A DNA stretch of 63,806 nucleotides, the filler included, from Octopus bimaculoides (Eukaryota): NCBI RefSeq assembly GCF_001194135.2. It is 9 parts of 9 records of this genome, joined end to end, with 100 filler letters (N's around TTAATTAATTAA, not from the genome) between each part and the next. Parts side by side here need not be neighbours in the genome. Positions count along the whole stretch, not along the records: positions 19,317 to 26,168 come from NC_069007.1; 8 more parts are not named here. One strand, 5' to 3'. Below, piece after piece: positions 24,591 to 26,168 of this stretch. The notes under the pieces are model-generated. The model had not been told where the DNA came from. It worked only from the letters and a program-made list of their open reading frames with translations, and did not search any database. The position numbers were made by a program, and so were the translations under genes. Each line of letters opens with the position of its first letter. Positions within the stretch are counted from its first letter, which is position 1.

Positions 24591-25588
24591 TACATTAAAC
24601 GGATATGTATNNNNNNNNNNNNNNNNNNNNNNNNNNNNNNNNNNNNNNNNNNNNNNNNNNNNNNNNNNNNNNNNNNNNNNNNNNNNNNNNNNNNNNNNNN
24701 NNNNNNNNNNNNNNNNNNNNNNNNNNNNNNNNNNNNNNNNNNNNNNNNNNNNNNNNNNNNNNNNNNNNNNNNNNNNNNNNNNNNNNNNNNNNNNNNNNNN
24801 NNNNNNNNNNNNNNNNNNNNNNNNNNNNNNNNNNNNNNNNNNNNNNNNNNNNNNNNNNNNNNNNNNNNNNNNNNNNNNNNNNNNNNNNNNNNNNNNNNNN
24901 NNNNNNNNNNNNNNNNNNNNNNNNNNNNNNNNNNNNNNNNNNNNNNNNNNNNNNNNNNNNNNNNNNNNNNNNNNNNNNNNNNNNNNNNNNNNNNNNNNNN
25001 NNNNNNNNNNNNNNNNNNNNNNNNNNNNNNNNNNNNNNNNNNNNNNNNNNNNNNNNNNNNNNNNNNNNNNNNNNNNNNNNNNNNNNNNNNNNNNNNNNNN
25101 NNNNNNNNNNNNNNNNNNNNNNNNNNNNNNNNNNNNNNNNNNNNNNNNNNNNNNNNNNNNNNNNNNNNNNNNNNNNNNNNNNNNNNNNNNNNNNNNNNNN
25201 NNNNNNNNNNNNNNNNNNNNNNNNNNNNNNNNNNNNNNNNNNNNNNNNNNNNNNNNNNNNNNNNNNNNNNNNNNNNNNNNNNNNNNNNNNNNNNNNNNNN
25301 NNNNNNNNNNNNNNNNNNNNNNNNNNNNNNNNNNNNNNNNNNNNNNNNNNNNNNNNNNNNNNNNNNNNNNNNNNNNNNNNNNNNNNNNNNNNNNNNNNNN
25401 NNNNNNNNNNNNNNNNNNNNNNNNNNNNNNNNNNNNNNNNNNNNNNNNNNNNNNNNNNNNNNNNNNNNNNNNNNNNNNNNNNNNNNNNNNNNNNNNNNNN
25501 NNNNNNNNNNNNNNNNNNNNNNNNNNNNNNNNNNNNNNNNNNNNNNNNNNNNNNNNNNNNNNNNNNNNNNNNNNNNNNNNNNNNNNNN

Positions 25589-25653
25589 CTGCATTGAAAG
25601 TGTTTTGCGTAGGATGTGTGCAGTGCCCAGTAGTGCAATTTTCTGTATGTTAT
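25589..25653 (-). pseudogene. R4/Dong ORF C-terminal fragment
   Basis: Minus strand reads NIQKIALLGTAHILRKTLSMQ, matching the R4/Dong terminal motif QK.ALLGTA.ILRK.L; runs into a gap. Confidence 0.8.
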
Positions 25654-25664
25654 ATATATATATA

Positions 25665-25756
<92 letters not shown>

Positions 25757-25758
<2 letters not shown>

Positions 25759-25828
25759 TTTGCACAGCTTCTAACGCTGGAGATGTGCTGCAGTGTCAAC
25801 TGTTCACTACCAGTGAACTAAGGTAACA

Positions 25829-25829
<1 letters not shown>
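25757..25829 (-). mobile_element. Isolated R4/Dong 3'-UTR flanked by (TAA)n on both sides
   Basis: 57/67 identical to 36497-36563, the 3'-UTR of the Dong copy at 36497-38570; perfect stem-loop gttcact-acc-agtgaac at 25802-25818. Confidence 0.8.
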
Positions 25830-25880
<51 letters not shown>

Positions 25881-25887
25881 TATTCAA

Positions 25888-25960
25888 GGCGCTGCCTGGA
25901 ATCGAACTCGGAATCTTGGGGGTTAGTAGCCGGCGCTCTTAACCATTACGCTATATGCCC
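25888..25960 (-). mobile_element. tRNA-derived SINE head (tRNA-Arg-like)
   Basis: Minus strand gggcatatagcgtaatggttaagagcgccggctactaacccccaagattccgagttcgattccaggcagcgcc; A and B boxes present, stems imperfect, so not called a functional tRNA. Confidence 0.7.
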
Positions 25961-26122
25961 GTAGGCAACAAACAAGATGAGGACAGATAGCCCCGTCTAA
26001 TGTAAATAATGTACGGGATTTTAATGTTCCAGAACAAGTTATACGATGTAGTCACAGCAGATGTGACACTAAGAAAGCGCTGGCTTAATAACAACCATAA
26101 TGCTGTTCGTTCATAATAGAAA

Positions 26123-26168
<46 letters not shown>

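What the first reader, a model, noticed from the sequence alone, without database searches (positions are those of the whole stretch)
25666..25960. tRNA head + (TAA)n + Dong 3'-UTR + (TAA)n: candidate R4/Dong-mobilised SINE
Seen, on the minus strand in order: a 73-nt tRNA-like head with A/B boxes, ~55 nt of (TAA)n, a 73-nt segment 57/67 identical to the 3'-UTR of the Dong element at 36.5 kb including a 7-bp stem-loop, then a (TAA)n tail. Established: SINEs are Pol III head plus LINE 3' tail; Dong elements target TAA repeats; to my knowledge SINE partners of REL-clade elements are rarely described. Inference: either a chimeric microsatellite-targeting SINE, or an extremely 5'-truncated Dong that used a SINE-internal TAA tract as landing pad, which could be how such SINEs are born.
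Basis: partly seen in the sequence, partly recalled or inferred. Interest (0 to 1): 0.72.

Follow-up and report, generated by a model that had tools for sequence, protein, structure and literature searches.

The report
LINE tail fragment in SINE's TAA tract
A short tRNA-derived promoter head sits next to a 73-base retrotransposon tail fragment that landed inside a TAA microsatellite in octopus-like DNA; this is most likely an ordinary nested insertion, and no evidence could be obtained that the two parts move together as a new mobile element.

Summary
- TTGAATAAA + (TAA)16;
- a 73-nt unique segment with a perfect 7-bp hairpin (25829-25757);
- (TAA)20-TTA-(TAA)9-(TA)8.

The box pair is far beyond chance. 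The head resembles tRNAs in sequence, but it no longer folds or scores as a tRNA.

The claimed 57/67 match to a Dong 3'UTR lies outside my piece and could not be checked. No second copy of the head or the 73-nt segment could be reached: none in the piece, in about 100 kb of octopod DNA I fetched, or in any searchable collection.

The locus itself favours two separate events. Only the 73-nt segment is bracketed by TAA repeats on both sides. The head's 5' flank has no TAA and no target-site duplication. Co-orientation is forced for any (TAA)n-tailed element that lands in a (TAA)n tail.

Best reading (about 0.6): an extremely 5'-truncated (TAA)n-tailed LINE copy, Dong-like, inside the TAA tract that follows a tRNA-derived SINE head. 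A real Dong-partnered SINE family remains possible (about 0.15) and needs a whole-genome copy census.

The parts
25961..26125 (-). 5' flank of the head: unique sequence with no TAA repeats. It is preceded by a (TC)21 microsatellite at 26126-26168.
   Evidence: The last 60 nt read ...CATCTTGTTTGTTGCCTAC. No k-mer of 6 nt or more is shared with the 3' flank, so no target-site duplication is detectable.
25888..25960 (-). 73-nt tRNA-derived head carrying a Pol III type-2 promoter: A box at 25953-25943, B box at 25898-25908.
   Evidence: both boxes match with one mismatch or fewer, against 0.003 pairs expected by chance. Not detected by ARAGORN at default settings or by the Rfam tRNA model. Does not fold as a cloverleaf.
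25830..25887 (-). Linker TTGAATAAA followed by a perfectly pure internal (TAA)16 tract. It is either the original tail of the head element or an expanded AATAAATAA proto-microsatellite. It is the upstream remnant of the landing site.
   Evidence: TRF: 17 copies, 100% matches.
25757..25829 (-). 73-nt unique segment that ends directly in (TAA)n. Contains a 7-bp/3-nt hairpin at 25802-25818, which the minimum-free-energy fold extends to a helix over nt 1-37.
   Evidence: No Rfam match. No other copy in the piece. Homology to Dong not testable here.
25667..25756 (-). Terminal (TAA)20 TTA (TAA)9 tract: the element's tail fused with the downstream remnant of the target microsatellite.
   Evidence: TRF: 30.7 copies, 97% matches.
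25591..25666 (-). (TA)8, then a 60-nt unique 3' flank up to an assembly gap. There is no run of four or more T between the head start and the gap.

Best explanation
Two independent retrotransposition events are stacked at one microsatellite.

1. First, a tRNA-derived SINE head came to lie directly upstream of a (TAA)n tract. It is either a 'simple' head-plus-tail SINE or the 5' part of a longer one. The tract was either its own tail or an expansion of the AATAAATAA that follows the head.
2. Later, a LINE whose RNA ends in (UAA)n used that tract as its target. The enzyme nicked the repeat. The (UAA)n tail of the RNA paired with the nicked strand and primed reverse transcription.
3. Copying stopped after only 73 nt of the 3'UTR (extreme 5' truncation).

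This left (TAA)16 - 73 nt - (TAA)n, next to the head and necessarily in the same orientation as it.

Shown: the anatomy, the promoter boxes, the TAA brackets around the 73-nt unit only, and the absence of TAA or a target-site duplication upstream of the head.

Inferred: the order of events, the identity of the LINE, and target-primed reverse transcription as the mechanism.
For: - The 73-nt unit is the only part bracketed by TAA repeats on both sides. This is the canonical look of a Dong copy in its target (PMC3812793).
- The head's 5' flank is unique sequence with no TAA, and no target-site duplication of 6 nt or more surrounds the whole unit. The composite was therefore not delivered here as one TAA-targeted unit.
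- The octopod origin of the DNA is supported. Window repeats at 21636-21735 and 22677-22947 hit O. sinensis and O. vulgaris loci at 65-78% identity, but not Argonauta loci.
- In O. vulgaris, Dong-R4 has 5 families and 1129 young near-full-length insertions, and SINEs make up 11.6% of the genome (PMC13282606). Such collisions should therefore be common.
- Co-orientation is forced, because a (TAA)n-tailed RNA can pair with a (TAA)n tract in only one direction (inference).
- No second head+tail copy was found in the piece or in about 100 kb of octopod DNA.
Against: - The homology of the 73-nt segment to a Dong 3'UTR could not be verified by me.
- A truncation to 73 nt that happens to keep the whole hairpin, with no Pol III terminator anywhere in the unit, is also exactly what a functional SINE tail would look like.
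- The head has no body and no detectable target-site duplication of its own, so how it arrived is unexplained.
- The absence of other copies rests on a tiny sample and has almost no power.
Confidence: 0.6

Rival explanations
1. A true composite SINE family. The head, a short A-rich/TAA linker, a Dong-derived 3' module with its hairpin and a (TAA)n tail are transcribed together by Pol III from the internal A/B boxes. The Dong protein then copies the unit into TAA microsatellites. This locus is either a member or the source copy.
For: All modules are present, in the right order and on one strand. The promoter boxes are far beyond chance. There is no run of four or more T from the head start through the tail to the gap, so Pol III could read through. 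A stem-loop upstream of a repeat tail is typical of 'stringent' LINE/SINE tails (PMC3747384). Dong-R4 is abundant and recently active in Octopus.
Against: The upstream flank has no TAA repeats and there is no target-site duplication, so this copy does not look like a daughter of a TAA-targeting element. Co-orientation is uninformative. No other copy was found in any reachable data. No SINE with a named Dong/R4 tail and a tRNA head appears in the literature I searched.
Confidence: 0.15
2. A one-off chimera made in a single event by template switching. The reverse transcriptase copied the last 73 nt of the LINE RNA, then jumped onto the (UAA)n 3' end of a SINE or tRNA-like Pol III transcript and copied it to its 5' end.
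For: The head appears complete at its 5' end: it starts seven bases before the A box, as a tRNA does. It has no body, and the junction lies within TAA repeats, where a jump would be guided by pairing. Template jumping is established for R2-type and L1 reverse transcriptases (my own knowledge, not tested here).
Against: A TAA-targeted event should still leave target TAA repeats upstream of the head, and none are present. With one copy, this reading cannot be told apart from two sequential events.
Confidence: 0.1
3. The 73-nt segment is not Dong-derived. It could be the 3' end of another (TAA)n-tailed LINE (for example I clade), the body of the head's own SINE, or plain unique DNA between two TAA arrays. 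Alternatively, the juxtaposition is a mis-join of a draft assembly within TAA repeats.
For: I could not verify the Dong match. I-clade LINEs also end in TAA repeats (PMC3747384). The piece is a gapped draft assembly full of microsatellites. Octopus carries other short (TAA)n-tailed units with unrelated sequence (L001 6605-6780 and 7069-7244).
Against: The internal tract is only 51 nt, short enough for single reads to span, so a mis-join there is unlikely (inference).
Confidence: 0.15

Closest known systems
5'-truncated copies of Dong (R4 clade) in (TAA)n microsatellites (Dong of Bombyx mori, DongAg, DongBg of the snail Biomphalaria)
   Same: A unit that ends in (TAA)n and is flanked by TAA repeats on both sides. 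A mollusc host with abundant Dong-R4.
   Different: Only 73 nt remain and there is no coding sequence.
Stringent-type SINE/LINE pairs such as UnaSINE1/UnaL2 of eel
   Same: A tRNA-type head, plus a LINE 3' module with a stem-loop, followed by a short-repeat tail that the reverse transcriptase slips on.
   Different: Those are proven multi-copy families, with fixed junctions and a body between head and tail. Here there is a single locus, and a long pure microsatellite sits between head and tail module.
Entamoeba dispar SINE-like elements EdSINE1 and R4-N1_ED, paired with the LINE R4-1_ED
   Same: Short non-autonomous elements that share the 3' end of a LINE carrying an R4 name (Table 1 of PMC3747384).
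   Different: They are protist elements of unknown promoter, with no tRNA head and no microsatellite targeting.
Mosquito Gecko SINE with I-clade LINE tails
   Same: A tRNA-headed SINE whose listed partners are I-clade LINEs. The I element of that clade ends in TAA repeats.
   Different: The partner belongs to another LINE clade. It is an established multi-copy family.
R2 SIDEs (short internally deleted elements)
   Same: Non-autonomous derivatives of LINEs. SIDEs are cited as such in PMC11481361, and R2 is listed among clades that generate bipartite non-autonomous LINEs in PMC5786205.
   Different: They arise by internal deletion of the LINE itself. They do not arise by fusion to a Pol III head.

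Membership tests
SINE (SINEBase definition, PMC3531059) | Internal Pol III promoter (A and B boxes) in a head derived from a small RNA | tested here: met
   A box at 25953-25943 and B box at 25908-25898, one mismatch each; 0.003 such pairs expected per shuffled piece.
SINE (SINEBase definition, PMC3531059) | Head recognisable as a tRNA by structure-aware detectors | tested here: not met
   ARAGORN at default settings finds nothing; only at an 80% threshold does it report a tRNA-Ser(ACT)-like hit. The Rfam tRNA model gives no hit at E<=10 even on 116 nt. Fold z-score is +0.59. This is common for old SINE heads and is not disqualifying.
SINE (SINEBase definition, PMC3531059) | Many genomic copies with the same modules and junctions | not testable with these tools
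   No copy in the piece, in 43 kb of Octopus loci or 60 kb of Argonauta loci, in three DNA collections, in the protein collections, or in held papers and supplements. No octopus genome was searchable.
SINE (SINEBase definition, PMC3531059) | 3' tail of simple repeats | tested here: met
   (TAA)20 TTA (TAA)9 at 25756-25667.
Dong/R4-mobilised element (daughter copy) | The whole unit is inserted in, and flanked on both sides by, the (TAA)n target | tested here: not met
   The 5' flank of the head is unique sequence (...TTGTTTGTTGCCTAC) with no TAA. Only the 73-nt segment has TAA on both sides.
Dong/R4-mobilised element (daughter copy) | 3' module homologous to the 3'UTR of a resident Dong element | not testable with these tools
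No Dong sequence from this organism could be fetched.
5'-truncated Dong insertion | Ends directly in (TAA)n and is bracketed by TAA repeats, in the orientation of the repeat | tested here: met
   ...GCAAAGG|(TAA)20 downstream and (TAA)16 T|GTGTTACC upstream.
5'-truncated Dong insertion | 5' ends of copies scattered along the full-length element | not testable with these tools
   This needs the genome-wide set of copies.

The most novel reading that the evidence does not exclude
This locus is a member, or the founding source copy, of a tRNA-headed SINE family that carries a Dong (R4-clade) 3' module and is copied specifically into TAA microsatellites. That would be the first SINE partner, in an animal, of a microsatellite-targeting LINE with a restriction-like endonuclease. 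It would also be a caught-in-the-act example of a SINE born when a truncated LINE tail lands in the repeat tail of a Pol III-transcribed element.
Probability: 0.15. Interest if true: 0.65.

Novelty: already known. Interest (0 to 1): 0.3.

Why it matters
If this is the nested insertion it appears to be, it is routine genome wear. It shows only that TAA tracts beside SINE heads are landing pads for (TAA)n-tailed LINEs in octopus-like genomes.

It would matter if a census showed that the composite is amplified.
- SINE/LINE partnerships are documented almost entirely for the CR1/L2, RTE, I, Tad and L1 clades.
- A tRNA-SINE that rides on a microsatellite-specific R4/Dong element would extend the 'shared tail' rule to target-specific LINEs.
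- It would also give a concrete route for SINE birth: a tail fragment captured by insertion into a Pol III element's own repeat tail.

Octopus genomes are rich in both SINEs (11.6%) and young Dong-R4 copies, so they are a good place to look.

Tried and rejected
DNA scans for exact matches all gave 0 hits:
- The 73-nt hairpin 20-mer, in metagenome contigs and viral contigs.
- A head 24-mer, in viral contigs.
- A 27-mer of the other SINE head in the piece, in viral, metagenome and bacterial/archaeal genome contigs. These collections hold no octopod DNA.

Protein-space detours (all three searches used):
- Translations of the three open frames of the 73-nt segment: no candidate.
- Six frames of the head plus frames of the other SINE head: 1018 word-sharing candidates, none at E<=10.
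It returned only one Octopus protein. This gave two orthologous 21.6-kb loci, three short contigs of another octopod and two Argonauta loci. None holds the head or the 73-nt segment.

Exact look-ups of four ORFs of the window found nothing on record.

Literature:
- Head and tail strings occur in no held paper.
- They also do not occur in the 400 kb of O. vulgaris transcripts held as a supplement.
- SINEBase supplements are not held, and the original Dong paper is not held.

Rejected ideas:
- Co-orientation of head and tail as evidence for a SINE. It is forced under the nested reading.
- The equal 73/73 lengths as meaningful.
- The many miRNA 'hits' in the piece. They are microsatellite artefacts below the gathering scores.

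Full report
**What is there**

Read on the minus strand, the locus runs as follows:
- a unique flank ending ...TTGTTTGTTGCCTAC;
- a 73-nt head, GGGCATATAGCGTAATGGTTAAGAGCGCCGGCTACTAACCCCCAAGATTCCGAGTTCGATTCCAGGCAGCGCC (25960-25888);
- TTGAATAAA, then a perfectly pure (TAA)16 and one T (25887-25830);
- a 73-nt unique segment, GTGTTACCTTAGTTCACTGGTAGTGAACAGTTGACACTGCAGCACATCTCCAGCGTTAGAAGCTGTGCAAAGG (25829-25757);
- (TAA)20 TTA (TAA)9 (25756-25667);
- (TA)8, then 60 nt of unique sequence, then an assembly gap.

**The head**

- An A box (TAGCGTAATGG) and a B box (AGTTCGATTCC) are each one mismatch from consensus, at tRNA spacing.
- In the whole piece such a pair occurs only here and at a second SINE head at about 24523-24575. 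About 0.003 pairs are expected per shuffled piece.
The score is 21, against -8.9 +/- 4.3 for shuffles. Because the references come from memory, this is a lead and not a database result.
- ARAGORN finds no tRNA at default settings. At an 80% threshold it reports a tRNA-Ser(ACT)-like hit.
- The Rfam tRNA model gives nothing at E<=10, even when only 116 nt are searched.
- The head folds no better than shuffles (z +0.59).

So the head is a decayed, tRNA-derived Pol III promoter module, as is usual for SINEs. It is not a tRNA gene.

**The 73-nt segment**

- It holds a perfect 7-bp stem with a 3-nt loop (25818-25802). The minimum-free-energy fold extends this to a helix over nt 1-37.
- A perfect hairpin of that size arises in 1.9% of shuffles.
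- The overall fold energy is unremarkable (z -0.81).
- It has no Rfam match and no second copy in the piece.
I could not test it.

**Where the DNA comes from**

- The piece is a gapped draft full of microsatellites and SINE fragments.
- Two of its repeats (21636-21735 and 22677-22947) match loci that I fetched from Octopus sinensis (CM016863.1) and O. vulgaris (OX597818.1) at 65-78% identity, several times per 21.6 kb. They do not match Argonauta hians loci.
- A 14-mer of one repeat also occurs in an O. vulgaris transcript.
- The source is therefore an octopod close to Octopus. The species is not determined.

Published work on Octopus is relevant:
- In O. vulgaris, SINEs are 11.6% and LINEs 12.9% of the genome. 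Dong-R4 has 5 families with 1129 young, near-full-length insertions (PMC13282606).
- A full-length Dong is in the O. bimaculoides repeat library (PMC9115989).
- Dong-R4 is shared among coleoids (PMC8967140).
- Dong elements target TAA microsatellites, including in a snail (PMC3812793).

**Search for other copies**

- Exact-match scans with a tail 20-mer, a head 24-mer and a 27-mer of the other SINE head gave zero hits in viral, metagenome and prokaryote genome contigs.
- Translated frames of the tail and head found nothing in the protein collection.
- Four window ORFs are not on record.
- My last protein search, built from O. vulgaris transcripts printed in a supplement, yielded only about 43 kb of Octopus DNA, 60 kb of Argonauta DNA and 11 kb of another octopod. 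The head and the tail are absent from all of it.
- The strings occur in no held paper or supplement.

This absence has almost no statistical power.

**What the locus itself says**

Four points bear on the two readings.
1. Only the 73-nt segment is bracketed by TAA repeats on both sides. This is what a Dong copy in its target looks like.
2. The head's 5' flank has no TAA. No direct repeat of 6 nt or more links the 5' flank to the 3' flank. The head-to-tail unit therefore does not look like a daughter copy delivered to a TAA target, nor like a unit with a target-site duplication.
3. An RNA ending in (UAA)n can prime on a (TAA)n tract in only one orientation. Any such insertion into the TAA tract that follows a SINE head must therefore be co-linear with the head (inference). 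The shared orientation is no evidence for a composite element.
4. There is no run of four or more T from the head start through the tail to the gap, 370 nt in all. A Pol III transcript could span everything. This is permissive for the SINE reading but does not prove it.

**What is known**

- Ohshima's table of SINE/LINE pairs lists CR1/L2, RTE, I, Rex1, Tad, L1, Vingi and RandI partners.
- In that table, the only pairs whose LINE carries an R4 name are 'SINE-like' Entamoeba dispar elements (EdSINE1 and R4-N1_ED with R4-1_ED), of unknown promoter (PMC3747384).
- The same review notes that I-clade LINEs also end in TAA repeats. It also notes that a stem-loop before the repeat tail is typical of 'stringent' LINE and SINE tails.
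- R1, R2 and R4 are described as target-specific LINEs, and RTE, Ingi and R2 as clades that generate non-autonomous derivatives (PMC5786205).
- Surveys of mollusc SINE partnerships mention no Dong partner.

A tRNA-headed, Dong-tailed SINE in an animal would therefore be new. However, the Dong identity of the tail is unverified, and other (TAA)n-tailed LINEs are possible donors.

**Verdict**

- **Nested insertion (about 0.6).** An extremely 5'-truncated copy of a (TAA)n-tailed LINE, Dong-like, sits inside the TAA tract that follows a tRNA-derived SINE head. This is ordinary.
- **Amplified composite SINE (about 0.15).**
- **Single-event template-switch chimera (about 0.1).**
- **Tail not Dong-derived, or an assembly artefact (about 0.15).**

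The exciting interpretation is not excluded, but it has no positive support, and one in-locus feature (no upstream TAA) counts against it. A whole-genome copy census would settle the question in minutes.

Noticed in passing
window 24498-24592 (minus strand): A second, different tRNA-type SINE head with A/B boxes (A at 24575 or 24567, B at 24523). It carries an 11-nt tandem duplication, CCACTGCGCCT x2.5, at 24565-24591. Its 5' end lies about 20 nt from an assembly gap that starts at 24612.
   Followed up: partly
window 21636-21771 (+ strand): A SINE-like piece with a B-box-like GAGTTCAAATCCCAC. It is 77-78% identical to L001:612-710 and L002:992-1090. An exact 19-nt tandem duplication follows at 21735-21771.
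   Followed up: partly
window 22677-22947 (+ strand): A repeat that matches several places in each 21.6-kb Octopus sinensis and O. vulgaris locus (five in L001, four in L002) at 65-69% identity, or 89% over the one 45-nt partial match. It is an abundant octopod interspersed repeat, and it is the main evidence for the origin of the window.
   Followed up: partly
window 23770-24165: Dense trinucleotide arrays, (GAY/GGT)n followed by (CGT/CAT/CAG)n, that are roughly reverse complements of each other. They could form a long hairpin. They give only spurious sub-threshold miRNA matches.
   Followed up: no
window 23093-23490 and 19317-19700: Compound (TG)n/(TA)n/(TATG)n microsatellites. They produce dozens of sub-threshold Rfam miRNA 'hits' (mir-297, mir-466, mir-3149 and others), which are artefacts of low complexity.
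   Followed up: yes
L001 6605-6780 and 7069-7244 (same in L002): Two copies of an AT-rich unit of about 145 nt, each ending in (TAA)n. They lie tail to tail, are 93% complementary over 176 nt, and are 288 nt apart. This is another short (TAA)n-tailed element or foldback in Octopus, unrelated in sequence to the 73-nt segment.
   Followed up: partly
L006 23052-25691 (+), L006 27888-29966 (-), L006 4622-7353 (-): The Argonauta hians loci carry long open reading frames with non-LTR reverse-transcriptase motifs (880 aa and 693 aa) and a retroviral-type integrase/gag-like pair. There are no TAA tracts in these loci.
   Followed up: no
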